Assembly (NCBI RefSeq): GCF_902652985.1
Contig: NC_047030.1
Location: forward strand, 21,514,001-21,578,000
Length of the DNA: 64,000 bases
Source of the DNA: Pecten maximus
Taxonomy: Eukaryota
Direction of reading: 5' to 3'
Shown here: positions 2,889 to 42,570 of the stretch, piece by piece
Layout: every line of letters starts with the position of its first letter
Position numbering within the stretch: position 1 is the first letter of the stretch
Position numbers and translations under genes: made by a program
Notes under the pieces: generated by a model
Database searches by the model: none
The model's input: only the letters and a program-made list of their open reading frames with translations
What the model was told of the DNA's origin: nothing

Positions 2889-5800
2889 TTATGGCTGCGG
2901 TAGTTCGTACTGTCGGAACATGAGATTGTTGTACTCTATCACAGACTTAACAGATTCGAAATACACAGAGGAGCCCGCATACCACATTCCATATTTTCCT
3001 TGCATTTCGAAAATGTCCCATGTTATTCCAGATGCTATGTCGGCGACGGAGAACTGTGGAAAGTAGTCCCATACAAAAACTCGGAGAAGGTTAAGTACTT
3101 CTGCTCCTTCTCGTTGTTCAATGTGTTCTCGTAACTCGTTCTCTAGCTCGTCTTTGTCGGGATTTTCTCGGGTGAATTGATAATACACAGATGTTTGGTC
3201 GAATCTTCCATCAGCTCCGGGATACAGATTATCAGTGTAGTTCGCTCCAGTATTGTACTGGAGGCTGTTAAATGAGTCTCTTTTAACCCAAACACTCCCG
3301 TCAACCTTCGAATTTATGTTATCGGCGAAGTAGCTTTCTGGAGTAAGACCTCTCTCCGTTCCGTTTATTTCTTTGGTATCTACCAATGAGGTTGTATAAT
3401 AGTAACGGTTCATTTTCTTAAACCTACTCTTCTCCTCCTTATTAAAGTCAATGATGTCTAAATCCGACATCAGTTTCATCTCTGTTGTTAATACCACGAA
3501 GTCAAAAGGTTCCTTCTTTCTTCGCTGAGTTGGACCATCAACATATTCTATCTGAAACGCAGGTCGGTCCTTCCGTCCCTTCCGTCCCCCACCCGCCATC
3601 TTGCGTCGGTTTATCCTCATTACCGGGCTAGAAAGTCGTACGTTAAGACACTCCTGTTCTACTATTGCTTCCCATAGCGCCTGATATCCTTGACTTAGTA
3701 CCTTGATGGTCGAGATTTCGCCCGATGGCGGATTTAGAGCCTGAAAAATAAAGCTGGGAGTATTCCATGTTAAACCATACAAAGCCGGGATTTCGTCTAG
3801 GTGACCATATCCTTGTGTTGTCTGAGTCAGTAAGAAATAATTTTGTAGAATTTCGATATCATGCTCCTTCAAAAATTCTAAAAATGTCATGTTCAGCTCA
3901 TTTTCGAGTATGTCATTTGATGGACGTGGCATCAGTTCACCCTCGTATGCTCCGAACAGTTGAATATGTACTTGCATGTACTTCTGTATCGCGTTGAAGA
4001 ATGTTGTAACGATCTCACCCTGAGTGGCATTAGGCAGCAAGCTTTGGGCTGCAGGGAGGACTGAAAACATTAACGATGACAGCCTATCTGCAATGAAAAA
4101 AAAAATTTGAAGAAAGTTATCAAAACAGTTCTCTTTCCCATCTAATCTCTCTTTCCCGTCAAATCTCCTTCTTAACCGTTTTATATCTTTCCCGTCGTCT
4201 AATCTCTATCTTTCTCGTCTAGTTTCCCGCTTTCCCATCTAATCTCTCTCTTTCCCGTCTAATCTCTCTTCTCTCTGATTTCTATATTTCCCGTTGTCCA
4301 ATCTCCCCGCCTTATCTATATCTCTCTTTCCCGTTTAATGTCTTTCCCCCTTCCCCGCCTTATCTATCTCTTTCCCATCTAATCTCTCTCTTTCCCATCT
4401 AATTTATCTCTTTCCCATCTAATCTCTCTCTTTCCCGTTTAATCTATTTCTTCCTTCCCCGCCTTATCTATCTCTTTCCCATCTAATCTCTATCTTTCCC
4501 ATCTAATTTATCTCTTTCCAATCTCATCTATCTCTTTCCCATCTAATCTCTATCTTTCCCGTTTAATCTATTTCTTCCCCGCCTTATCTATCTCTTTCCC
4601 GTCTAATCTCAATCTCTCTGATTTTTATCTTTACTGTCGTCTAATCTTTTTCTTTTCCGCCTAATTTTTCTCTTTCACATCTAATCTCTCTTTCCCGTCT
4701 AATCTATCTCCTTCCCACCTTGTCTATCTCCTTCCCACCTTGTCTATCTCTTTTCCGTCTAATCTCTCTTCTCTAATTTCTATCTTTCCCGTCGTCTAAT
4801 CTTTTTCTTTCCCGTCTGTGTTTTCTCTTTCCCGTTTAATCTCTCTCTCTCTTTCCATCTAATCTATCTCTTTCTCATCTTATCTCTCTCTTTTTCGTCG
4901 AATCTCTCTCGTTCCCGCCTTGTCTATCTCTTTCCCATCTAATCTATCCCTTTCCCATGTAATCTCTCTTTCCCATCTTATCTTTCCCGTCTAATCTCTC
5001 TCTTTCCCATTATATATATATATATCTCCCCCGTCTAATCTATCTCTTTCTCATCTTATCTCTCTCTTTTTCGTCGAATCTCTCTCGTTCCCGCCTTGTC
5101 TATCTCTTTCCCATCTAATCTATCCCTTTCCCATGTAATCTCTCTTTCCCATCTTATCTTTCCCGTCTAATCTCTCTCTTTCCCATTATATATATATATA
5201 TCTCCCCCGTCTAATCTATCTTTTTCTCATCTTATCTCTCTCTTTCCCGCCTAATTTCTTCCTACTTTTATTTCTNNNNNNNNNNNNNNNNNNNNNNNNN
5301 NNNNNNNNNNNNNNNNNNNNNNNNNNNNNNNNNNNNNNNNNNNNNNNNNNNNNNNNNNNNNNNNNNNNNNNNNNNNNNNNNNNNNNNNNNNNNNNNNNNN
5401 NNNCTGATTTCTATTTTCCCGTCGTCTAATCTCTCTCATTCCCGACTAATCTCACTCTTCTCTAATTTCTATTTTTACCGTCGTCTAATCTTTTTCTTTC
5501 TCGTCTGTGTTTTCTCTTTCCCGTCTAATCTCTCTCTTTCCCGCCGAATCTCTCTCTTTCCCATCTAATCTATCTCTTTCCCATTATATATATATATATC
5601 TCCTCCGTCTAATCTATCTCTTTCTCATCTTATCTCTCTCTTTCTCGTCGAATCTCTCTCGTTCCCGCCTTGTCTATCCCTATCCCTTCTAATCTATCCC
5701 TTTCCCATCTAATCCCTCTTTCCCATCTTATCTTTCTCTTTTCCATCTAATTTCTCCCTTTCCCATCATATCTCTCCCTCCCCGTCTAATCTCTCTCTCT

Positions 5801-25179: not shown

Positions 25180-26480
25180 AATACAATATCGTCAAAGTAT
25201 ATAACTAAATACACCACATCGTCAAAGTATATAACTAAATACACCACAGCGTCAAAATATATAACTAAATATACCACAGCGTCAAAGTATATAACTAAAT
25301 ATACCACATCGTCAAAGTATATATAAGTAAATACACCACAGCGTCAAATTATATATAACTAAAGATATCACATCGTCAAAGTATATAACTTAATATACCA
25401 CATCGTCAAAATATATAACTAAAGATACCACATCGTCAAAGTGTATAACGAAAGATACCACATCGTCGAAGTGTATAACTAAATACACCACAGCGTCAAA
25501 GTGTATATAACTAAAGCTACCACAGTGTCAAAGTATATAACTTAATATACCACCGTGTCAAAGTATATAACTTAATATACCACATCGTCAAAGTATATAA
25601 CTAAAGTTATCATATCGTCGAAGTATATAACTAAATACACCACAGCGTCAAAGTGTATATAACTAAAGTTACCACAGTGTCAAAGTATATAACTTAATAT
25701 ACCACAGTGTCAAAGTATATAACTTAATATACCACATCGTCAAAGTGTATAACTAAAGATACCACATCGTCAAAGTATATAACTAAATACACCACAGCGT
25801 CAAAGTGTATATAACTAAAGTTACCACAGTGTCAAAGTATATAACTTAATATACCACATCGTCAAATATATAACTAAATACACCACATCGTCAAAGTGTA
25901 TAACTAAATATACCACATCGTCAAAGTGTATATAACTAAAGTTACCACATCGTCAAAATATATAACTAAATATACCATATCGTCAAAATATATAACTAAA
26001 TATACCATACCGTCAAAGTATATAACTAAATACACCACATCGTCAAAGTATATAACTAAATATACCATAACGTCAAAATATATAACTAAATATACCATAT
26101 CGTCAAAGTATATAACTAAATATACCACATCGTCAAAGTATATAACTAAATATACCATAACGTCAAAATATATAACTAAATATACCATATCGTCAAAGTA
26201 TATAACTAAATACACCACATCGTCAAAGTGTATAACTAAATATACCACAGTGTCAAAGTATATAACTAAATATACCACATCGTTAAAGTGTATAACTAAA
26301 TACACCACAGCGTCAAAGTGTATATAACTAAAGTTACCACAGTGTCAAAGTATATAACTTAATATACCACAGTGTCAAAGTATATAACTAAATATACCAC
26401 ATCGTCAAAGTATATAACTTAATATACCACAGTGTCAAAGTATATAACTAAATATACCACATCGTCAAAGTATATAAATA
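25180..26480. repeat. 30-bp minisatellite (tatataactaaatataccacatcgtcaaag)
   Basis: About 43 units; explains the ORFs at 25122-26327. Confidence 0.97.
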
Positions 26481-27693: not shown

Positions 27694-30600
27694 TTACACA
27701 ATATTATTGAAGGTGGACAAGGCTAACATCGTAACAGCGTATGTGTATGGCTCAGATGACCAGAATGGGAAGTAGCGATCCTGGTTATTAAAACCCGGGA
27801 AGTCAATGGGGGATTTCATTTCCGTCTCTTCATGCTTGTACCAGGTTTCATTCGGAACTCCTTGCATCCCCCGGATCACAGTCCCGTAATAATGGTGTCC
27901 CGAAGGAACTTTGGTTCCGTTGAAAAACTCATGTCTGTTCGCTGGATATTCGGACCAAGATGTCTTGAAAGAAAACCAAAGATACATATCCTTTTGTAAT
28001 CCAACTGAAGTCGTTCTAATTTCGTGTAATTAATAACGATATAGGCCGTGGCCATACGCAAAAAAAAACTAAAGGGATGTGAAAATGTTTACAACGGCAC
28101 CACTGCTGTTAAATATTTTGTATAAGATTGCAGTTGTTAATATATGCATAGTACATAATTCCAGTAAACCTCTATGTACAAAATGTATTTCAAATATACA
28201 ATTGATTTGTAGTTTTTGAAAGGAAAAGCTTTGAAAGATCCCCCTTTCTCGATTAAATCTTTGAAAGGTTTGGACTTGATCTGTAAGACCTACAAATCTA
28301 CTGGTATAATAAAAATGTTCAAAGTAAGTAGACCATTTACCCCTGAACCTTTGACAGAACCGGAAAAGAATGCGTTCCATGGTTTGTAGTCCCCGGATAA
28401 TACGTAGGTATCCAAAAACTTCACAGCACGTGCTACAACGTCCTTGACCTGTTTCGGTGTTGCTGGAAAACAAGAATACCAGTTCGATAACAAAACCGTT
28501 ATTCTAACTCAAAGCCGAGAAAATTTTGGCAAAAAATTGACAAAAGATATAGATTGCATGGATACCCTTACAAAAGTACAGAAAAGATAAAAGAAATGTA
28601 GGCCAAATCTGGGTTAATTCATGTTCTCAAAATGGGAGTAAGGGTGACAACGAAACCAGAAGGCATATCGACAACCAACGAACACGTCGGTCTTTACACA
28701 AGGAAACATATTTCCAAAGGAGAGATCGAAAAAAAAATGATTAAAATTTAATGATGCCACGTCAATCTTGCAGATAACACTAAAAAGTAAGTTATGGCAA
28801 TGGTTATACATGTGTATCGGCTTCGTGTAATTGAATTTCATTTTGGATATCTCTCAGAAGTACAGTTTTTACACTTGTTGTACATCTTACTTTGATTCCA
28901 GATCAGCGTTCCGGATTTCTCCTCGAATGAAGTCCATATTGTGATAAGGGCATTAGCGGCCATAGCGGTGGTAAACAAACGATCCTCGCCGTATTTCTGT
29001 AAACAGACATCATAAGTAAAGTAAGTATTTTAGCATGCACAAACAGAAAAATAAACGGCTGTACACCTGCGTGAGAGCAGATAAAACTACAAGCTAAGCT
29101 ACGTACACGTTTGTTACATAACCTAAGCAAGCCAACGTGGGGGTTGTACGCTCTACCCATTGCAATTTAGGTGTCGTAGATCGTGAGTTCGAGGGCCGTC
29201 GTACAAAAAACCTTTGTCATTTGTGTTAATATGTTATATATCTCAAAATTGACAAAATGTATCATTCGCACCCTGTTCTTGATCACAAGGTTAAAGATTT
29301 AATTTTCCTGTCCTGATTGCACTGTTTTGAATATATCTGCAGTATATTGTATATAAAAAATTTTATCAACAACGAAAATTAACCAATGTTCTTTTTTCGA
29401 AAGGGAAGTAATATTGGCCCTAACAGGTTACCAAACCAACAAAGTCAGAAAAGAACATTCCCACTGCAGATGGCCTTGAAGCATGTACCTAGAGTAATAG
29501 TATACTATTACAATATACTTAAGTAAATATCCAATTCCGTGTCATGTTAGATTCGTTATTAGCATATTTCTCATAAGAAAAGTACAAACCACGGGTTTCC
29601 CTTCAGCGTCAGTATCCCCGTCCCCAAGAAAATCATCATAATAAACCATATCGGTTCCCATCGGCACGGCTTCCTTCAACATTATGGTTGTAGCGTTATT
29701 CTTCAGGGCGCTACCTAAAATATCCATGGCCGTTTTCATAGTCTGTGAAAAAGAAGGTTTCATTAAATGTGCAGTAGTTTATAGATGTACAAATGCCATA
29801 TTTAGATGAATTTTTAGATTTTTTTTTTTCAATTTGCCCTTTTGCAATGCATCAATATTTGCATCAGTCTATTATGTATACAGAGTACTTCCATGATATC
29901 ACTTTAGAAAAGCATGAGTTTCATTAAATGTGCTTTGTTTGACATATGGTTGCAATGGTAGATGAATGCCCCAATTCTGGTCGTACTTTATCGATACCTT
30001 AACTCAGATGTGTTAAATGACATAAGTCCGTTGGTATTGATTTGTTTTTAATACATGTAATTATTATGCTGTAAACAAACTCTTTCTGACGTATTTAAAT
30101 GTTAGCTGGTAACATAATCTAAACAAATTAGCACAATTGCGAATTCGAACACCCGCAGTACTTTACCATAGACAACAATGGACAGAAACTGTAATTAGCA
30201 CATTCATAACTTAAGCGAATTTAGTTCAGCACGAAAATTGCGAAAATAAAATAATTCCATTTGCTCAGCATTGCCTTATTTCCAAAGGAGGCAGTTTAAT
30301 GTTTAAATAACTGCTAAAATAGCTAAGTACATGTATAATAATTGCAGTACAAATTATCTAGAAAATAACACTTCGCTCGTCAAAAGAGATCTACTTGTAT
30401 CCGGAAAATTCGAGATTACAATATTCTAAGACAATGAATGAAAGCCTAAGTATCAAACTGGTTTAGTAGTAAAGTTTGACCTACGCTGGATCTTTACGAA
30501 TGAGTTCAACCAAAACAGTTCCTTGGAAACTTTTGAAACTAAGGGAGATAATTAATATATATTTGCCCTGTAAATCCTGTACATATTGTATGAACAAACT

Positions 30601-33600
30601 TTCAGTGTCGCGCTATCTATGACGTAAGCGCTATGTGGTAGCCTTAATTTGGTATACTTTCGAGACACTAGATTATTGCAGCGCCTTGTACATTTCTGGA
30701 GCGTACTTTTCCACAAAGAGCAATTTGTTTCAGAACAGGAAAAAAACCAAAAACAACAAAAAACAACAACAAAAAAACAAACAAAAAATAATGGGGACTA
30801 GCTTCTGATGAAAAGGCCGGGTAGGTATTCTATACTATTTTCTCTTGTTTCAATACAGCCAGTACAATAACAGTTCTTCGTCCCTATGAAACAATGATAT
30901 TAATATGTTCCCTTGCTGTAACCCGATATGAACAATGGCCAGTAGAACTGAATAAAGCAATGTTACACAACTTTCCAGAATATTTTAGCACGATGGCATT
31001 AAGGTTTTTAATACCCGGTCAGTATTTGATGCGATATGCCTTCTGAAATGAAAAGCTGTTACAACCGCCATCCCCCTTACCGAGCTTTGTATACATCTGT
31101 TATGAGAGAGGTTGTTTTATCACCCGATTGCAACGAAAAATATTAGAGCCGTTGTTCAAAAAGTAAAAAAGTTCAATTTTAACGAAACCGGGGGTATAGT
31201 CATAACAAGATCACATACTGGATATCTTTATTTGTGAAATATCATCCAGAATTAATTGATGGGCAGATGTCATAAAATGTCATATTTTGAGAATGAACGA
31301 GTTTTTGCTGTTTCTTTTGCAATGAATCAATATTTAGATACTTAAGTAAATATATATGCATACGGTGTACCTCTATACTATTAATCAGTTAATATTCAAA
31401 ACTGTTTTGTTCTTTCAATTGAAAAAAAAAAGAAATTCTAGAGATTTCTGAAAACTTACTACACGATTGTTGTCTACTTACGTAGTGAGGAAGGCCATTA
31501 TAGGTATAACGTCTCAGTAGTTGACTGTAGGTCCTGGCCACGAACCAGTAGAACTCTATAGCTGACGGGTAGTAGGTCAGTGCTAGGTCCGGCCGGCTGG
31601 AGAAATTGGTGTTTATCTGGTAGGCTATCATTGTTGACGTGTTCAGGTAGATTTGCTAGATTTTTTTTATATAAATGTTTATCGTAATAAATTGAATACA
31701 TTTTGAAATGTTAACCTTTCATCACTTTTTGTTCGCTTGTCATGTCAATTTATTATTATCAATAGAGGAAAATTATTATATTTTCAATTACATATTAAAG
31801 GAACACAATGTTCTTTTCCATTGTACTAGTGTGAAAGCTATGTAAACTATTTCATATTAGATATCAATGTATGTTACACAAAACAAACGTTGTTCACTAG
31901 ATAAAATACTAGTTGTATACATCTGTAACATGTTCTCGCGTTTGACATTATTTTGAATTACTTTAAACCTAAATTACATTTTAAAAGTCACGGAATCAAA
32001 CAAATTGAGATATATTATATATAAGACATTATATCATAAGATTTTAAAAAATTGACAAATTTCATTATATTGCTGACTGATATTCTTGTACATGTGCTTT
32101 TACAATGTGTCACCTGCATATCTGGATCTTCCAAGACCTCCGCCGTGACGAGACCGGTAAGTATGCTGTTGGTGATTCCAAATAAGGCATTGGCCGCCAC
32201 CGTGATGTCGACGTTATTGACGTTGCCAGGGGTTACTACTCCCTTGAAGTACTGTGTCTTAATATCCTCAAGGTCCTGTACCTGTAGTTAATACACAAAA
32301 TGATTCATAAACGTGTAATCATTGAAATGGACATCAGTTGAAGTTCAGTTGCCTGCTATTTATTTCATTGTACGGGACTTTATTTGACAAGAAAGGTGAC
32401 CGGTGTAAATACGTTTGAACATACTTGAAAGTAAATGTTTTTCATAAAACAAGTTAGGATATGTTGATTTTTAAGAAATTAAACTCCTGGTTGAGATTAA
32501 AATCTTTGTTGGGTTTGTTAGTTTGGTCATACAAGTTTGGCACACTATGGGAAAACCATATTCCCACTAAGTCATATGATAAGCGTGATGACTGATTCAA
32601 CATACTATGACTTGTTTTCAGTTTTCAATATCGTGAAAGATGTCTGCACTAACGCAAAATTTCGAGATATGCATGTTAATTGAGCTCATTATCTCATTTT
32701 CAAATGTCTGACATTCTTGTTGCTCTTTAGTTTCTAGATGGGACCGTTACTTCTACCCCAGTTCTCATTTTGGGAATGCGACATTGTTTCTGACCTAGAC
32801 TAACCGCGCGAGTGTTGTTAACAAATCATTTTACGCTTATGCTTTCTAATACCTGGTTTTATTGTACCTTTTTACGTTTAATAAACGTTATCACACAATA
32901 AGGCCAATTATATTGAAGAAATGTAGTATCGTCGTTGTAAGTTTCTCTTATTGTAACTAGTGTTTGTGGTGAGAGAGAAATACATGTCAAATTTTACAAA
33001 AATAGACAAAATACCAAATACAGCCAGTACAAACCCATGTTGTTACTAACGCAACATCTTCATTCTTTGACTTTGCCAGTTCGAGGAATTTACGCATGTA
33101 GACATATGTACGAGTGTCGATGGTATCCACGCGTTTATTCCCAGAGAGAGGTCGGTAGGCGTAGTGTTTGATAGCGCTGAATACGGAGGACAAGTTCGAG
33201 TTCCGGGACTGCCAAAGCGCATTGGATTGTGGGAAATCAATGATGCCTTCCTTCAACAGTGACCCCAGACCTAGGTTCACGGATGTGTCATCAAAGTCTG
33301 GAGGTATACGGAACACATGTTCATAACCTGATCTGAAAATAGAGATATAGGAATCAGTACTTAGTAAGCCGCCGGCAGTTGTATTTGAAACTCAAGAGAA
33401 TTTTGGGATTTTCATTTGATAATTGTTTAGTTGTGATATAGCATGGCAGTATGTATACAGACCTTTCGTCTAGACATTTGGCGTATATACTATACCAAAG
33501 TTAGCTTTTATGCAGCAGCGATAGAATGCTATATTTTCATGTCATGAATTACTCTAATGGATTTAGAAGAATATTAGTAATTCTAAATTAATGACTATGA

Positions 33601-34593
33601 AAGATAGTTGGTCGACCTTTCCTTAAACTATCGAATATTTCATTAACTCAATTCACTATCTAGTTTATATTCAATGAGAACATTTAAAAGTAACCTTTAA
33701 TTGAGAAAAAGGTAACAATCGATCAGTTTGGGGAAATGGGTCATATATATTGTTTTTAAGGTGGTTATATTTACTTGGAGGCTAGCAGCCTCTTCATAAT
33801 ATCGACGACGTCCTTTAGGCCTAGTTTTTCCATCTCGGCATAAACAGCATTCCAGTTGATAAGATCAGTGGCGTTAAACATGGACAGAAGGTTAATGGGG
33901 GTGCTGACCCAACCCTAAAATATACAAACATTGACAGTAAGTTAATGGGAGTGCTCAACCAACCCTAGAATATACAAATATTAACAGTAATTTAATGGGA
34001 GTGATGACCCAACCCTAGAATATACAAATATTAACAGTAATTTAATGGGAATGCTCAACCAACCCTGAAATATTTTATCATTGACAGTTAATTTAAGGGT
34101 GTAATGACTCCACCTTCACCCACTTTCCCTCCCAATGACTTACTTGATAGGCTTCGTCGTACTCCTGAGGCCAAAATGCCATAATTGAGTTCGTATAGTT
34201 GCTGTTCTTTTCGTTGTGATTGTCCATTAAAATCTGTATTGACATACTAATCTGCTCTTCGGAGGGCTTCGGTGCTTTTCCGTAACGATAAGCTTCCAAA
34301 AGACATGATGTAATCCAAGCAGTTGCAAACATATTATTGTCAAATACTTCGAACTCGTAACGAAGAGCGCTCATGTCGGGGTTTCCATGAAAGTACTGCC
34401 TGACATCACTTTCATAGATTCCACGAAATTTTCCCCAGAACACTGGCGGTATTGAAGGAACCGTTCTTTGTACCTGCATCAACTTTATTCTTTTGAATAA
34501 TTCTGTAACTGTCGATCCCACGTCACCATTAGCGGGATTTAAAACAGCAATGCATCCCAACAGCACCACAAACAACATGACGTTTCTCTCCAT
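27694..34593 (-). CDS. Uncharacterised secreted ~626-aa protein with DxDDT motif, putative (alpha/alpha)6 class II terpene-cyclase-like fold; paralog A
   Basis: Exons 34593-34144, 33914-33775, 33332-33035, 32281-32114, 31655-31482, 29742-29590, 28996-28891, 28462-28341 and 27963-27694, all GT-AG, 1881 nt in frame. Signal peptide MERNVMLFVVLLGCIAVLNPANG. Motifs PPDFDDTS, NNVDITVAAN and TYYPSAIEFYWF. The gene structure is solid; the function is inferred. Confidence 0.85.
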
Positions 34594-34670
34594 GGCTAAA
34601 GACCAACAACCAACGACAAACAACACCGACACTCACGCGTGTATGTGACCACGTCCTGTTGGCAGACGGG

Positions 34671-34677
34671 TTATATA
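34671..34677 (-). promoter_or_regulatory. TATA box of paralog A
   Basis: TATATAA ~80 nt upstream of the ATG; identical in paralog B (42648-42654). Confidence 0.65.
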
Positions 34678-34977
34678 GAGTTCTTATCTTGGGCACAATC
34701 AACACCTTATCATGTACCAATCACAGTGTTAACATGGGATTCCGATCCAGGTCGTCTATGAATGTAATTTGTGTATTATATTCCTTGGTAATTGTATTTT
34801 TTCTTTTTTAGAGCTTATATCGTTAATTTTTTTCTTTGTCTATTTACGTATTTCCTTATTTCATTTTATATGTATTTTTAGATATTCAATTATTTCAATA
34901 CAAAATGTCGTTATGATATGTATTCATTTCCTAAGAAAGCAAGCCATATAAATTCACAATGCAATGCATTTAGATCC

Positions 34978-35308
34978 TTTACTGAAGCATACTGGACAAC
35001 AGCAGGACACCCCATTAAACATTAGACTGACCACAGACGAACCAGTCGTCCCATTCTTAAAATGCTGAGCTTTAAGCAGAAGTAGAAACTATAAGTTTGA
35101 AAAACCACTGGTAAGTCTCGGCCTAAGGACGGAACCCAAATCTATCCACAGAGGGACCGAACGCTCAACTAGAAGTAGAAGTAATTAGTCAGTGTCAATG
35201 AAGAAGAAAGATGTTTAGAAAAAATAAAAAAGATAAGATTCCAAATGTAGTCGCCTTTTCCGATCATGCAACAGGAGCAGCAGAGAAAAGATCTTACCCC
35301 AGGGCACT
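34978..35308 (-). mobile_element. Decayed Meta-type SINE copy including the 5' leader
   Basis: Matches the reverse complement of ~12471-12820; a more decayed copy lies at ~45950-46210. Confidence 0.7.
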
Positions 35309-35517
35309 TGAATTCAGGAAGTTAAATTTTAAAATGTATTGTTGCTTTCAAAAATATTCGACATTTTGTGTGTTTCTATTATTACTATCAATTAGACTTG
35401 TTCACTGCCTGTTAGTATGGAGTAAGCTTTTGGGCTTAATGTTTAGTTTGTGAAGTTGTTGCTTATCTATCAGTTTAGTTTATTGATGGTACAAGTGCAA
35501 CGCTTAAGGAATGTTTC

Positions 35518-35835
35518 GCCAGTTTGTATCTAATGACTTCCTTCTCCAGTTTGTATCTAACGGCTTCCTTCTCAAGTTTGTATCTAACGGCTTCCTTCTC
35601 TAGTTTGTATCTAATGGCTTCCTTCTCAAGTTTGCATCCAACGGCTTCCTTCTCCAGTTTGTATATAACGGCTTACTTCTCCATTTTGTATCTAACGGCT
35701 TCCTTACCCCAGTTTGTATCTAACGGCTTACTTCTCCATTTTGTATCTAACGACTTCCTTCTCTAGTTTGTCCCTCATGGCTTCCTTCTCCACTTTGTGT
35801 CTGACGTCTTCCCTCTCAATTAGTACCTAACGGTT
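35518..35835. repeat. 27-bp minisatellite (agtttgtatctaacggcttccttctcc)
   Basis: About 11 tandem units. Confidence 0.95.
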
Positions 35836-36428
35836 TGTTTCTTTACATTAAGTTTCAGATATGTTGGCGAGTGCTGCTTCAACGCTACATTAAATTCGAT
35901 TGGTCAGTATGATAGCTTAACAGTCTGTCTGTTGGAATTCTGTTGATTACGTCAATAACTTCTTAGTTTCCTCCCTTTTATGATTTTATTCCCATACATT
36001 CTTGAATTATTTACCAGCCACGATTCTCTATCTATATCTCCGCCTATCAAATCCATTCTTCCCTTTCTCTGTCATTTGCCACATAAGCTTTGCATCTGCC
36101 GCAGTTTCGAGTCTATTCACTTTCTTATCACAGTTTTGGTATCTGACTTTCCGTAAGTTTGTTTCACCATTCACTCTTGTGGCTGCCAGTACATATTGTA
36201 TTCTAAGACTTGGACATAAACATGTTTTGGACTGTTATAAACCTAACAAACAGTCATCTCTTGCTAAAATATCACAATAAAGTCATTATTGATGCCGTCA
36301 CATTATGTAAAATAACATAATTGATTAGTAGAGAGTTTTATATTGATTTATTTATGTTTTTCGTTGTTCATATATTTACAAAATATTTTAATTCAATACA
36401 GAGAAAATACCTATATTTGCGATTATAA

Positions 36429-39400
36429 TCAAACAATATTATTGAAAGTAGACAGGGCTAACATCGTAACAGCGTATGTGTATGGCTCAGATGACCAGAA
36501 TGGGAAATAGTTTTTCTGATTATTAAAACCCGGGAAGTCAATGGGAGATCTAATTGCCGCCTCCTCTTCCTTGTACCAGGTTTCATTCGGAACTCCTTGC
36601 ATCCCCCGGATCACAGTCCCGTAATAATGGTGTCCCGAAGGAACTTTGGTCCCGTTGAAAAACTCATGTCGATTCGCTGGATATTCGGACCAAGATGTCT
36701 TGAAAGAAAAAATACATATTTTTATGTAATCTAGCTGATGAAGTTCGGTTGTTATATATATATATTGATTTATTGATTGACATTTATTTATTAAGATGAA
36801 ATCATTTAATTATGACAACTGATAAATATATGAGGTTATGACATAGGTATTTATCCCTATATAAGATAACCTATGTATATGATGCAATGAGAATGCAATG
36901 AAAAGTTCACTGTCTACAATGAATTTTGAAATTTTATAATCTCCAGTTAGATATTTGGCCCTGGATACAGATATCATTATCGTTTGTAGATTATTTACCC
37001 CTGAACCTTTGAAGGAACCAGAAAAGAAAGCATTCCATGGTTTGTAATCCCCAGATAATATGTAGGTATCCAAAAACTTCACAGCACGTGTTACAACGTC
37101 CTTGACTTGTTTTGGTGTAGCTGAAATTACATGTTATTGTTATATAAAGCATACCTCCAAGTCAGACATCGGTTTTAATTGAACGACACAGACCAATACA
37201 TGCTTTTATAAGACATAACTTGGTTATGCATTGCTATCCAAAAAACCTATACACACTAATTTGACTTATCTAAAATTATAGGTGAAGCAGAAGTGTTACA
37301 ATGCCTTGAAGATTACTAATTTGTCGGTGACAATGGCAAATTTTCAAAAAAATAATTCATCCCGATAAAGATCAGGGGGTCAACAAGGGAGGGACCAATT
37401 TTCCAAACATTCCAAAAATACATCAGAAACAGTTTTTAACGGTGTATCATAACAATACTCTCCACGAATTATCCCTAAAATATACAACTTTTATAGTATT
37501 TTGTGAAAATATGCTTTCAATTCAACAACATTTCTAAAAAGGTAAATTATTTCAAAAATGTTGCATTTTGAGGATTGCTATATCAATAACTAGACCGACT
37601 ATCAATAGACTAAAAAAGCATTACTGTAAGAAGCTATCATAGAAAATATACATCACACAATATTTTATTTTTATACCGAATTTCAACTTTTTTCTGCCAA
37701 ATGGATTTATGGGTGATAGTGTATTTATTCAATTAGCATACAAATACCAGTTGGATATTGGCAAAAAATAAATCTAAAATTAACTTCATTAAGAAGATTG
37801 AACATTGAATTACAACATTGACGAAGACACGTTAATCTTACAACCCAAGATTGTATACAATACTAGTAATACCCGAGGAAATGAATTCCTCTTCGGATAT
37901 GTATCGTTGTACTTCATCTTACTTTGATTCCAGATCAGCGTTCCGGATTTCTCCTCGAATGACGTCCATATTGTGATAAGGGCATTAGCGGCCATAGCGG
38001 TGGTAAACAAACGATCCTCGCCGTATTTCTGTCAACAGACATCAGTAGTAAAGTAAGTATTTTAGCATGGACAAAGTCAAGATAAACAAAAGAACAAAAT
38101 GCATAGATAAAATACGTTCATATTTGTGTTGCCTAAAGCAAGCTATTATGGGAATGGAACGCTTTGCCAATTATCCTACTCCTTTAATCACTAGATTGGT
38201 ACTCAAGTACACCTATATTTGGAGTATAGTGTATGTAAAAATGTAATGCTAACAAAGAAAGACTAATATTTTTTCTCGCAGGTTGAAGTGATATTGGAAT
38301 TTGACCCGTTACCATAGCCATGAAAGTCAGCAAAGAACATTTCCACTGCAGATTGCCTTGAAGCTTGTACCTAGAGTAAAAGTATACTATTACGATATAC
38401 TTAAGTAAATATCCAATTCCGTCTTATGTTAGGTTCGTTATGAGCATATTTTTCATAAGAAAAGTACAAACCACGGGTTTCCCTTCAGCGTCAGTATCCC
38501 CGTCCCCAAGAAAATCATCATAATAAACCATATCGGTTCCCATCGGCACGGCTTCCTTCAACATTATGGTTGTAGCGTTATTCTTCAGGGCGCTACCTAA
38601 AATATCCATGGCCGTTTTCATAGTCTGTGAAAAAAGAAGGTTTCATTAAATGAGCTATATTACATAGATCTATGAGTACCATATTAAGATGAGTGATTTC
38701 AATTTGCCTTTTTTGCAATGCATCAATATTTGCACCAGTCTATTATGAATACATGGCGCTTCCACTTTATTCATATGGATGCTTGTTTTATCTAAAAATG
38801 TTATTGATTTTTTTTAAAGATTGCTTAAAACTTTCTATATTGACGAAGCAGGACGGGCAAGACATCTACTACACGATTGTTTTCTGCTTACGTAGTGAGG
38901 AAGGCCATTATAGGTATAACGCCTCAGTAGTTGAGTGTAGGTCCTGGCCACGAACCAGTAGAACTCTATAGCTGACGGGTAGTAGGTCAGTGCTAGGTCC
39001 GGCCGGCTGGAGAAATTGGTGTTTATCTGGTAGGCTATCATTGTTGACGTGTTCAGGTAGATTTGCTAGATTTTTTATATAAATGTTTATCGCAATGAAT
39101 TCAATTTCGAAGTATATTTTAAACTGCTAGCATCTCATCAGTTTTTTGTTTTGTTTTTGTTTTTGTTTTTTAGTTTTAGTTTTTATCGCTCGTCATGTCA
39201 GTGTTGTTAGGGACTGCTAAGACCTTGACAACAACTTGCATGTATTGTTATCAGTAGAGGAAAATTATTATAATATTATTTCCATTTGCTTATTTCAATA
39301 AGACAATATTCAGTTTCATTAACATCTTCTAGTCTGTAAATCTTGTGAGCTGTTTCAGATCAGTAATTGTTACACAAAACCAACATAGTATAATTCACTT

Positions 39401-42400
39401 GATAAAATAGTTTACAAATGTTACAAAGTTCTCACGTTTGACCGTGAGTTGAATATCTTTTAACACTTGAATCATATCTTAAAATTCATGAAATCAAACA
39501 AATCAAGGATAATAATTGATATATTTTATAATATTACTGACTGATATTTTTGATTTTGAAAATGTGCCACCTGCATATCTGGATCTTCCAAGACCTCTGC
39601 CGTAACGAGACCGGTCAGTATGCTGTTGGTGATTCCAAATAAGGCATTGGCCGCCACCGTGATGTCGAACGTTATTGACGTTGCCAGGGGTAACTACTCC
39701 CTTGTAGTACTGTGTCTTAATATCATCAAGGTCCTGTACCTGTAGTTAATACACAAAATTATTCATAAATGTGTAATCACTGAAATGGACATAATGACGA
39801 TCAGCTTTATGCTATAAAACCATTTCACTTTTCCACTATGTACATAGAGCTAAAGGAAGTGTCTTCTTTCTCCTATATTTAGAGCTTTATTTCTCAAGAA
39901 AGGCATCCGGCAATACAAGCGTGAATTCGGCGTTAATAAGTTTGGACATGAAATATACTTCAGACATACCAAGGTTTGTTTTCAATATCACGATGTCCGT
40001 GACAGATGTCTACTAACGCAAAATATCTTACAAAAGATATTTTCGAGAGGTCTACCTTTATTGAGAAAATGGAGTTTCATTATCGTCATCATGACTTCAT
40101 TTGTAAATGTTTGACATAGTTGATGCTCTTAATTTCGACGGCCATCTTGCCACTGCCAATAGCCGACCAATGAAATCACGGTTTACAAAACTTGAACAGC
40201 AAGTAGCAAGATGGCCGTCGACTTGACACTGATACCTGTCGATGCAGAAAACAACCATGGGGAGCACGAGAGGAGAAATGGAATGAAGAGTTAGACAAGT
40301 AAATAAGTTTGTTTTGACCTCATATTTGTTAACACCAAACTCTGTGATTGTAGACCGTCACGTTTATCTGTGTAGCGAATAGACATTTTCATTTGAAAAA
40401 AATGGTCTCGATCGTGTCCGACTAAAGAAAATTCATCACTTTTCAGAGTTTCGAAGCTGCGTGTGAAAGAAATAGACTATTTATGTATGATTTCTTGGTG
40501 TCATGTTAAAGGTTACTATCTTAACTTTTGATTAAGACTATCGCCATTGAAAAATCTTTTCTGGTAAAATTTTGACGACACTTTGAGTGAAATTGACCCA
40601 TTTTTGCCGGACGGAGGAGTTCCAGACCTTTCTCCATATATCAGTCTATAATCGGTCTTGGACTTATAAACGTGCTTAGCACCTATGGTCTCGTAAACGA
40701 TTTTTGGAAATCTGTACATGTATTATTTTTGTTTAATTTCAATTGGATGCTTTTTAACTTGCACTGTCAGCTTTAAGATAAAAAGTTATAACGTCTTCAG
40801 AATGCTTATGAAATCAGTCGCGCAGTAAGACAGTTTATGGTAATTATATTGAATCATTGTGGTTTCGTCATTCATAGTTTCTATTGTTATAACTAGTGTT
40901 CATGTTGAGAGCTACAAAGTTGACAAAAGATACAGTCAGTACGAACCCATGTTGTAACTAACGCAACATCTTCATTCTTTGACTTTGCCAGTTCGAGGAA
41001 TCTACGCATGTAGACATATGTACGAGTGTCGATGGTATCCACGCGTTTATTCCCGGATAGAGGTCGGTAGGCGTAGTGTTTGATCGCGCTGAATACAGAG
41101 GACAAGTTCGAGTTCCGGGACTGCCAAAGCGCATTGGATTGTGGGAAATCAACGATGCCTTCTTTCAACAGCGACCCCAGACCTAGATTTACGGATGTGT
41201 CGTCAAAGTCTGGAGGTATATGGAACACATGTTCATAACCTGATCTGAAAATAAAAACATACATGTATGTAACAGTACTAAGTTAGGCAGGACGGTGTCG
41301 TGTTAGGAACTTTTGGATTTTAATCAATAATTGTTAACTGAAGAGCGTTAAGAGCATGCCAATATATATATATGTTGATCAATGTACATTCTACATTTCT
41401 ACATATATCTTATATATATATTTAATACATGGGACGTGTATACTATACCAATAATTGCTTTGCAGCAGTATTAACATAATGATATTTTTGTCGTGGATAA
41501 CATATGATTGAAGAAACAGTTTTTGAGTCTACTATTTATGTCTGCCAACAAATATAAAAGATATGATTTATAGAATACTGCAGTCATATTCAATTTGATT
41601 TGCATAAAAGATTGGTGGTCAACAGGGACCTTACCTTGAACCACCAGTATTAGATTTTGATTAATTCAATATGCTACCTAGTTGGAATTAGCTTTGTTTG
41701 AGGGGAGGAGGGGATTACTATTAAACGAATATAGAAAATAGGCTATTTCAAAAGGCAGATTTACTTGGTGGCCAGCAGTCTTTTCATAATATCGACGACG
41801 TCCTTTAGGCCTAGTTTTTCCATCTCAGCATAAACAGCATTCCAGTTGATGAGATCAGTGGCGTTAAACATGGACAGAAGGTTAATAGGAGTGCTGACCC
41901 AACTCTAGAATATACAATCATTGACAGTAAGTTAATGCGCGTGTTGATCCAACTATTGAATATACAAATAATAACAGTAAGTTAATAGGAGTGCTGACCC
42001 AACCCTAGAATATACAGACATCGACAGTAATTTAATGGGAGTGCTCAACCAACCCTGAAATATTTTATCATTGACAGTTAATTTATGGGTGTGAACCTAC
42101 TTCTCTTCCCAATGACTTACTTGATAGGCTTCGTCGTACTCCTGAGGCCAAAATGCCATAATTGAGTTCGTATAGTTGCTGTTCTTTTCGTTGTGATTGT
42201 CCATTAAAATCTGTATTGACATATTTATTTGCTCTTCGGAGGGTTTCGGTGCTTTTCCGTAACGATAAGCTTCCAAAAGACATGATGTAATCCAAGCAGT
42301 TGCAAACATATTATTGTCAAATACTTCGAACTCGTAACGAAGAGCGCTCATGTCGGGGTTTCCATGAAAGTACTGCCTGACATCACTTTCATAGATTCCA

Positions 42401-42570
42401 CGAAATTTCCCCCAGAACACTGGCGGTATTGATGGAACCGTTCTTTGTACCTGCATCAATTTTATTCTTTTGAATAATTCTGTAACTGTCGCTTCCACGT
42501 CACCATTAACTGGATTTAAAACAGCAATGCATCCCAACAGCACCACAAACAACATGACGTTCCTCTCCAT
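36429..42570 (-). CDS. Paralog B of the secreted DxDDT protein, with a 1-nt insertion in exon 4 (sequencing error or young pseudogene)
   Basis: Exons 42570-42121, 41904-41765, 41244-40947, 39739-39571 (169 nt versus 168 in A), 39065-38892, 38624-38472, 38028-37923, 37120-36999 and 36698-36429. All other exon lengths equal paralog A. Confidence 0.8.

What the first reader, a model, noticed from the sequence alone, without database searches (positions are those of the whole stretch)
27694..42570. Tandem pair of secreted animal proteins with a class II terpene-cyclase-like DxDDT motif
Seen: two 9-exon genes encode a ~626-aa protein with a signal peptide and IPPDFDDTS (DFDD at 33298-33287 in A), plus spaced motifs DNNMFATAWITSCLLEA, NNVDITVAANALFG, TYYPSAIEFYWFVAR, TTAMAANAL and FWSSEPYTYAVTMLAL. 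Known: DxDDT is the catalytic acid motif of squalene-hopene cyclases and copalyl-diphosphate synthases, whereas animal oxidosqualene cyclase uses DCTAE and is not secreted. The order PD.D.T...VD..V..N...YYPS...F also recalls the beta domain of fungal AstC-type drimane cyclases. Inference: a stand-alone, extracellular, protonation-initiated cyclase, hydratase or isomerase in a mollusc, which would be an unassigned animal enzyme.
Basis: partly seen in the sequence, partly recalled or inferred. Interest (0 to 1): 0.85.

Follow-up and report, generated by a model that had tools for sequence, protein, structure and literature searches.

The report
Secreted terpene-cyclase-like enzymes in scallop
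Two neighbouring, expressed scallop genes encode secreted proteins from an unnamed, widespread eukaryotic family that is predicted to have the fold and acid motif of class II terpene cyclases, so animals may have an unrecognised enzyme of this type.

Summary
Two tandem minus-strand genes of nine exons each encode 626-aa proteins (A 34593-27697, B 42570-36432). The proteins are 96.5% identical, with dN/dS 0.13. Each has an N-terminal signal-like sequence and carries IPPDFDDT.

Gene B is spliced and present in RNA contigs from four studies. These contigs lack the single extra base that breaks its frame in the assembly.

The proteins belong to an unnamed family of about 630 aa with no Pfam match. 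It occurs in molluscs, a starfish, amphioxus, rotifers, a sponge and several protists. It was not found in the 156 bacterial genomes sampled.

A naturally truncated member places the central Asp of DFDD on the published general acid of six cyclases. D-x-D is invariant in 135 members, and the rare variants (DxDC, DxDT) match variants known in cyclases.

There is no detectable sequence homology to cyclases, no QW motifs, and the substrate is unknown.

Verdict: a new secreted, single-domain class II cyclase-like family, probably acid-initiated enzymes. The same scan noted a paralogue 1.6 Mb upstream.

The parts
27694..34593 (-). Gene A, nine exons, 626 codons plus a TAA stop at 27696-27694. Exons: 34593-34144, 33914-33775, 33332-33035, 32281-32114, 31655-31482, 29742-29590, 28996-28891, 28462-28341, 27963-27697.
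   Evidence: The exons were placed by aligning the RNA-supported gene B exons onto gene A. All have AG acceptors and GT donors and no internal stops. They are collinear with P0168, P0167 and P0033.
36432..42570 (-). Gene B, nine exons, 626 codons once the extra assembly base is removed. Exons: 42570-42121, 41904-41765, 41244-40947, 39739-39571, 39065-38892, 38624-38472, 38028-37923, 37120-36999, 36698-36432.
   Evidence: Spliced RNA contigs from four studies bridge all eight introns; seven are printed with GT..AG ends, and the intron 7 junction fits after a 2-base adjustment. The gene matches the public Pecten maximus protein P0168 (LOC117345375) at 92-100% identity in seven of the nine exons. 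Exon 1 is not resolved because its tblastn match also spans intron 1, and the exon 6 match runs into the flanking introns.
33287..33298 (-). DFDD codons of gene A (protein residues 209-212). D211 is the proposed general acid.
   Evidence: Read directly from ORF 32987-33316. D209 and D211 are conserved in 135 of 135 members.
41199..41210 (-). DFDD codons of gene B.
   Evidence: Read from ORF 40893-41264.
34525..34593 (-). Signal-peptide-like N-terminus of gene A (about 23 residues with a hydrophobic core, ending ...NPANG).
   Evidence: Translation. Hydrophobicity heuristic across the family. In the model of the gene-B-like protein P0168 the corresponding segment is a separate helix (residues 2-17) followed by a low-confidence linker at 18-21.
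42502..42570 (-). Signal-peptide-like N-terminus of gene B.
39667..39668 (-). One extra base (a T on the coding strand) in gene B exon 4 of the assembly. It shifts the frame inside the NNVDITV motif.
   Evidence: DNA alignment of exon 4 from A and B. The base is missing from RNA contigs in X1, X5, X9 and X10 (table 4).

Best explanation
Both genes encode proteins of the secretory pathway. Each protein is a single (alpha/alpha)6 barrel of the class II terpene-cyclase beta-domain type, about 300 core residues, carrying roughly 300 further residues of loop, beta-hairpin and helical insertions. By topology, these insertions sit on the face where the inner helices begin. They would cap the active site, as the gamma domain or long loops do in known cyclases. 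DFDD sits at the N-terminus of the barrel helix that carries DxDD in known cyclases. The most likely mechanism is that the central Asp (D211), held in its acid form by D209, D212/T213 and a nearby invariant Tyr or Arg, protonates a C=C bond or an epoxide of a lipophilic, probably isoprenoid, substrate. The resulting carbocation is then cyclised, hydrated or isomerised. Shown here: gene structure, expression, purifying selection, family range, predicted fold, motif invariance and motif position. Inferred: secretion, the capping role of the insertions, the acid role of D211, and the nature of the substrate.
Against: No sequence-level link to cyclases was found. Pfam gave nothing for the exons, for 10 homologues or for 53 members. 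A PDB profile search found nothing relevant. hhalign against 75 bacterial SHCs gave probabilities of 0.4% and 1.6%. There are no QW motifs. Many invariant residues are polar (R78, D85, D269, R271, D321, R373, D375, R393, D466, R467, K534), which is unusual for a purely hydrophobic cyclase cavity and would fit a sugar or an anionic head group. A signal peptide places the protein away from the cytosolic prenyl diphosphate and squalene pools. The motif mapping rests on the first aligned residues and assumes no gap over the next 4-13 residues, because I had no coordinates.
Confidence: 0.6

Rival explanations
1. It is a carbohydrate-active enzyme, such as an unsaturated-uronyl hydrolase, another glycosidase, a lyase or an epimerase, built on a six-hairpin toroid. 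It would be used for digestion by particle feeders and phagotrophs, with the Asp cluster acting on a sugar.
Against: All ten top matches are cyclases, with a gap of 4-9 Z units and higher identity (11-15% against 5-11%). DxDD[TS] sits exactly at the cyclase acid position, and its natural variants copy cyclase variants. No glycosidase Pfam or PDB sequence signal was found.
Confidence: 0.2
2. It is a non-catalytic secreted binding or carrier protein, for example a lipid or isoprenoid carrier or an immune recognition protein, comparable to the toroids of transcobalamin or thioester domains.
Against: About a dozen charged and aromatic residues are fully invariant from amoebae to amphioxus, including D209 and D211. 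There is no conserved Cys and therefore no thioester motif. dN/dS of 0.13 shows purifying selection on the tandem pair but does not separate a binder from an enzyme.
Confidence: 0.12
3. Gene B is a dead copy, or the whole locus is bacterial contamination or a recent transfer without function.
For: There is a frameshift in exon 4 of gene B in the assembly. NCBI labels the corresponding protein LOW QUALITY.
Against: RNA contigs from four studies lack the extra base and are correctly spliced. There are nine exons, with canonical intron ends at seven RNA-supported junctions of gene B and at all AG/GT borders of gene A, and dN/dS is 0.13. Homologues occur across molluscs and other eukaryotes. None was found in the 156 bacterial genomes sampled.
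Confidence: 0.03

Closest known systems
Beta domain of HAD-fused drimenol synthase AsDMS (PDB 9mhs; AstC-type cyclases)
   Different: The scallop protein has no HAD phosphatase domain, carries a signal peptide, has about 300 extra residues of insertions and has no detectable sequence similarity. AsDMS is bacterial and cytosolic and acts on FPP.
MstE, monodomain class II meroterpenoid cyclase (PDB 6sbb), and the 342-aa Archangium cyclase (8paj)
   Different: They are bacterial, about half the size and have no secretion signal. MstE uses a DxD variant (PMC12414744). They are unrelated in sequence.
Squalene-hopene cyclase and oxidosqualene cyclase
   Different: The family has no gamma domain, no QW motifs (0 against 3.3 per SHC), no Pfam SQHop_cyclase match and no profile-profile signal. 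It looks secreted rather than being a cytosol-facing monotopic membrane protein.
Bacterial class II diterpene cyclases (PtmT2, Tpn2, Rv3377c) and SsDMS
   Different: Those enzymes have beta-gamma didomains, bind prenyl diphosphate with Mg2+ and are cytosolic.
GH88/GH105 unsaturated uronyl hydrolases and other six-hairpin glycosidases
   Same: An (alpha/alpha)6 toroid, secreted, and using Asp-driven protonation chemistry.
   Different: Clearly lower structural scores (18 or below for the full model), different catalytic motifs, and no sequence signal.

Membership tests
Class II terpene cyclase superfamily (beta domain) | (alpha/alpha)6 beta-domain barrel | tested here: met
Class II terpene cyclase superfamily (beta domain) | DxDD-type motif whose central Asp is the general acid, at the N-terminus of the same barrel helix | tested here: met
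   D209 and D211 are conserved in 135 of 135 members and D212 in 131 of 135. The motif starts helix 210-225. Alignment ranges place the central Asp on the known acid in six structures. The acid function itself was not tested.
Class II terpene cyclase superfamily (beta domain) | Hydrophobic or aromatic cavity next to the acid | not testable with these tools
   No model coordinates were available to me. Many invariant aromatic residues exist, but so do many invariant polar ones.
Class II terpene cyclase superfamily (beta domain) | Protonation-initiated cyclisation of an isoprenoid | not testable with these tools
   This needs an enzyme assay.
Squalene-hopene / oxidosqualene cyclase family (Pfam PF13243, PF13249) | Significant match to the family profiles | tested here: not met
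   No Pfam hit at E up to 10 in 53 members. hhalign against 75 SHCs gave probabilities of 1.6% or less.
Squalene-hopene / oxidosqualene cyclase family (Pfam PF13243, PF13249) | QW repeats and a beta-gamma didomain | tested here: not met
   0 QW motifs per member against 3.3 per bacterial SHC. The model matches single-domain cyclases almost end to end.
AstC-like_C (Pfam PF28380) | Match to the family profile | tested here: inconclusive
   The genome search' Pfam library lacks PF28380, so absence of a hit does not test it. Language-model similarity to such clusters is only 0.83, a range where chance hits are common. The structural match to AsDMS is the best of all.
Six-hairpin glycoside hydrolases | Closest fold relatives and family profile match | tested here: not met
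Thioester-containing domain (C3 / alpha-2-macroglobulin) | Conserved Cys-Gly-Glu-Gln thioester motif | tested here: not met

The most novel reading that the evidence does not exclude
This family could be the missing non-sterol class II terpene cyclase of animals and phagotrophic protists. It would work in the secretory pathway or outside the cell, cyclising or hydrating isoprenoids such as farnesyl or geranylgeranyl derivatives, squalene, prenylquinones or dietary polyprenoids. Its gastropod members would then be the enzymes behind the drimane- and labdane-type terpenoids that dorid nudibranchs are known to make de novo.
Probability: 0.3. Interest if true: 0.92.

Novelty: new variant of a known kind. 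Interest (0 to 1): 0.8.

Why it matters
Apart from oxidosqualene cyclase, no class II (protonation-initiated) terpene cyclase is known from animals. Recent surveys that screen by the SHC/OSC signature would miss this family (PMC13483135; PMC12414744).

Molluscs and sponges are rich in terpenoids whose skeletons require class II chemistry. De novo synthesis of drimanes has been shown in nudibranchs, but no enzyme has been assigned (PMC7143877).

This work gives a concrete and easily testable candidate family. It has the cyclase beta fold, an invariant DxD in the right place, spliced transcripts, and homologues from amoebae to amphioxus. It also has a signal peptide, which would make it the first secreted enzyme of this kind.

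Even if the substrate turns out not to be a terpenoid, the family would show a cyclase scaffold recruited to a new extracellular acid-catalysed reaction. It also deserves its own family model in the protein databases.

Tried and rejected
**Sequence searches that found nothing**
- Pfam on the eight largest exon ORFs of gene A, on 10 full-length homologues and on 53 members gave only chance hits.
- A profile search of PDB sequences returned only weak EF-hand matches (E about 0.1) to the DDFLGDGD loop.
- Foldseek against the PDB gave no match with E of 0.001 or better, and a mixed list of GH9, GH48, MstE and AsDMS. The exhaustive aligner was needed to separate them.
- hhalign of the family profile against 75 bacterial SHCs, taken from loci found with a YPDVDDTA DNA pattern, gave no signal, whether full length or restricted to the C-terminal part. 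The best local alignment paired the SHC DxDD helix with a different family helix, at 1.6% probability.

- The search for related loci with the 135-sequence alignment failed because no stretch was conserved enough.
- The genome search for PF28380 failed because that family is not in its library.
- PF13243 found nothing in the scallop genome when searched exon by exon.

**Other negatives**
- The family profile found nothing in 5 bacterial genomes plus 151 Myxococcota genomes. This is a sample, not proof of absence.
- A literature search on six family locus names returned no papers.
- The gene B pseudogene idea was rejected on the RNA evidence.
- LanC-like or prenyltransferase-like zinc sites were rejected for lack of any conserved Cys; His conservation was not tabulated.

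The exons were analysed one by one. The public protein P0168 stood in for the gene products; it has the same length, matches gene B at 92-100% in most exons, and matches gene A at about 90-100% in most exons.
Full report
**What is in the window**

The minus strand between 27694 and 42570 carries two copies of the same gene. blastn of the two halves shows 86-97% identity in nine blocks.

tblastn with full-length homologues gives nine collinear blocks per copy. For gene B, spliced RNA contigs bridge all eight introns. Seven are printed with GT..AG ends; the intron 7 junction carries two unplaced letters and fits after moving the exon 8 start by two bases, and intron 3 after a 2-base shift the tool notes.
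- Gene B exons: 42570-42121, 41904-41765, 41244-40947, 39739-39571, 39065-38892, 38624-38472, 38028-37923, 37120-36999, 36698-36432.
- Gene A exons, placed by mapping the gene B exons: 34593-34144, 33914-33775, 33332-33035, 32281-32114, 31655-31482, 29742-29590, 28996-28891, 28462-28341, 27963-27697.

Every gene A exon has AG/GT borders and no internal stop, and the total is 626 codons. Counted exon by exon, the two proteins differ at 22 of 624 codons. dS is 0.134 and dN/dS is 0.13, so both copies have been kept under purifying selection.

**The frameshift in gene B**

The assembly has one extra T in exon 4 of gene B, at 39667/39668. This breaks the frame and probably explains NCBI's "LOW QUALITY PROTEIN" label on the matching Pecten maximus entry, P0168. 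RNA contigs from four separate studies all lack that base (table 4). The gene is therefore intact in transcripts, and the extra base is an assembly error or a private allele.

The genome is 918 Mb in 3983 contigs. Its proteins match Pecten maximus entries at 92-100% in most gene B exons.

**The family**

No exon and no homologue matches any Pfam family.

A search of 1.84 billion representative proteins with exon 1 found 154 relatives, many of them 600-680 aa long. A second search with the Haliotis member found over 130.

Named members come from:
- all major mollusc classes;
- a starfish, three amphioxus species, bdelloid and seisonid rotifers, and a sponge;
- the protists Tieghemostelium, Flabellula, Anaeramoeba and Ancoracysta.

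All are labelled uncharacterised, and none of six locus names appears in the literature library. The family profile found nothing in 156 sampled bacterial genomes. The scallop has further copies on the same chromosome at 19.92 Mb and 24.00 Mb, and on an unplaced scaffold.

Of 135 full-length members, 114 have a strongly hydrophobic 10-residue stretch starting within their first 30 residues. There is no conserved cysteine. P0168 has ten N-glycosylation sequons.

**Fold**

Instead I modelled the public protein P0168 with an alignment of 135 members. P0168 has the same length as both gene products and is nearly identical to that of gene B. The model is very confident (pLDDT 95.7, pTM 0.93).

Foldseek alone was indecisive. 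An exhaustive alignment against 48,161 PDB representatives put ten class II terpene cyclases in ranks 1-10:

|---|---|
| Drimenol synthase beta domain (9mhs; rmsd 2.7 A, 299 residues, 15% identity) | 27.3 |
| PtmT2 | 25.3 |
| Rv3377c | 24.0 |
| Archangium monodomain cyclase (8paj) | 24.0 |
| Tpn2 | 23.8 |
| 6ij1 (an unnamed Actinoplanes protein; counted as a cyclase from its rank, not checked) | 23.7 |
| SHC | 23.5 |
| MstE | 23.4 |
| Human OSC | 22.6 |
| SsDMS | 22.2 |

The next entries are cellobiose 2-epimerase (18.2), GH9 (17.9) and GH76 (17.9). Thioester domains and transcobalamin score about 16-17.

**Position of DFDD**

No coordinates were available to me, so I used a natural experiment. 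P0248 is a Solemya gene model that lacks the first 170 residues and has DFDD at residues 45-48. I modelled it (pLDDT 93.8) and searched again.

In six cyclases the alignment begins just before the motif:

| Structure | First aligned pair (model / chain) | Chain residue opposite Asp47 |
|---|---|---|
| PtmT2 | 42 / 308 | D313 |
| AsDMS | 34 / 310 | D323 |
| Rv3377c | 38 / 286 | D295 |
| Tpn2 | 42 / 291 | D296 |
| SsDMS | 38 / 294 | D303 |
| OSC | 43 / 451 | D455 |

Counting forward without gaps gives the residues in the last column. These are the published general acids (OSC from my own knowledge of Thoma et al. 2004). Six agreements out of six cannot be chance, although each assumes an ungapped start.

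**Conservation**

- In 135 members, D209 and D211 are invariant, D212 is present in 131, and residue 213 is always Thr or Ser.
- The exceptions are three DxDCT proteins and one DxDTS. These are the same substitutions seen in OSC (DCT) and in AsDMS and Rv3377c (DxDT).
- Other invariant residues are R78, D85, F89, Y256, D269, R271, T295, Y380 and Y381.
- Most conserved positions lie at the N-terminal ends of the inner helices or in the loops leading into them. By topology this is the face that carries DFDD.
- Y256 and R257 lie 45-46 residues after the acid, the same spacing as the activating His of Tpn2 and Rv3377c. This is an inference from spacing alone.

**What does not fit a textbook cyclase**

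- There is no profile-level similarity to SHCs.
- There are no QW motifs and no gamma domain.
- The conserved set includes many charged residues.
- A signal peptide keeps the protein away from cytosolic prenyl diphosphates.
- The family occurs in many animals not known for terpenoid chemistry.

These points keep two rivals alive: a carbohydrate-active enzyme and a non-catalytic binder. The structural ranking and the motif evidence weigh against both.

**Conclusion**

The locus encodes two expressed members of an unnamed, eukaryote-wide family of secretory-pathway proteins. They have a class II terpene-cyclase beta fold and a conserved general-acid motif.

I put 0.6 on an acid-initiated enzyme acting on an alkene or epoxide, probably an isoprenoid, and 0.3 on a true terpene cyclase. 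The same scan noted the paralogue 1.6 Mb upstream (finding s1-792168). I confirmed that this copy exists and carries IPPDFDDTF.

Noticed in passing
window 39667-39668: The assembly carries one extra base in exon 4 of gene B. RNA contigs from four studies lack it. It is likely an assembly error and the reason for the 'LOW QUALITY PROTEIN' label on the public entry.
   Followed up: yes
G000:C16:24006650-24007010 (L152): A paralogue 2.45 Mb downstream reads DPPDFGSTF where the family has IPPDFDDTF. The central acid Asp and the next Asp are replaced by Gly and Ser. It may be a non-catalytic paralogue or a decaying copy.
   Followed up: partly
G000:C16:19918621-19925134 (L151) and G000:C1706:9456-9884: A further paralogue 1.6 Mb upstream has an intact IPPDFDDTF. 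A copy of exon 1 also lies on a small unplaced scaffold, possibly a haplotig.
   Followed up: partly
family members P0035, P0155 (Elysia crispata), P0117, P0042: Three members have DTDCT and one has DQDTS in place of DxDDT. This copies the OSC-type and DxDT-type variants of class II cyclases. These members are candidates for a changed substrate, for example epoxides.
   Followed up: partly
protein residues about 396-466, encoded by exons 5 and 6 (gene A 31655-31482 and 29742-29590): The conserved YxDDFLGDGD loop gives weak EF-hand (calmodulin, troponin C) matches at E about 0.1 in the PDB profile search. It may be a calcium site.
   Followed up: no
window 38000-38502: One RNA-Seq contig (run X5) runs unspliced from exon 7 across intron 6 of gene B into exon 6. 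This could be intron retention, pre-mRNA or DNA carry-over.
   Followed up: no
window 2889-4070 (minus strand): This is a 393-aa terminal ORF of the neighbouring gene, which another finding reads as a PUFA double-bond isomerase homologue. It has no Pfam match at E of 0.01 or better. Its position next to the cyclase-like pair could be coincidence.
   Followed up: partly
window 25904-26327 and 35524-35766: Coding-looking tandem repeats flank or separate the genes (units such as YLVIYFDD/KYITKYT and SFSSLYLTA). They are probably minisatellites, not genes.
   Followed up: no
window 5276-5403: A run of 128 N (assembly gap or masked).
   Followed up: no
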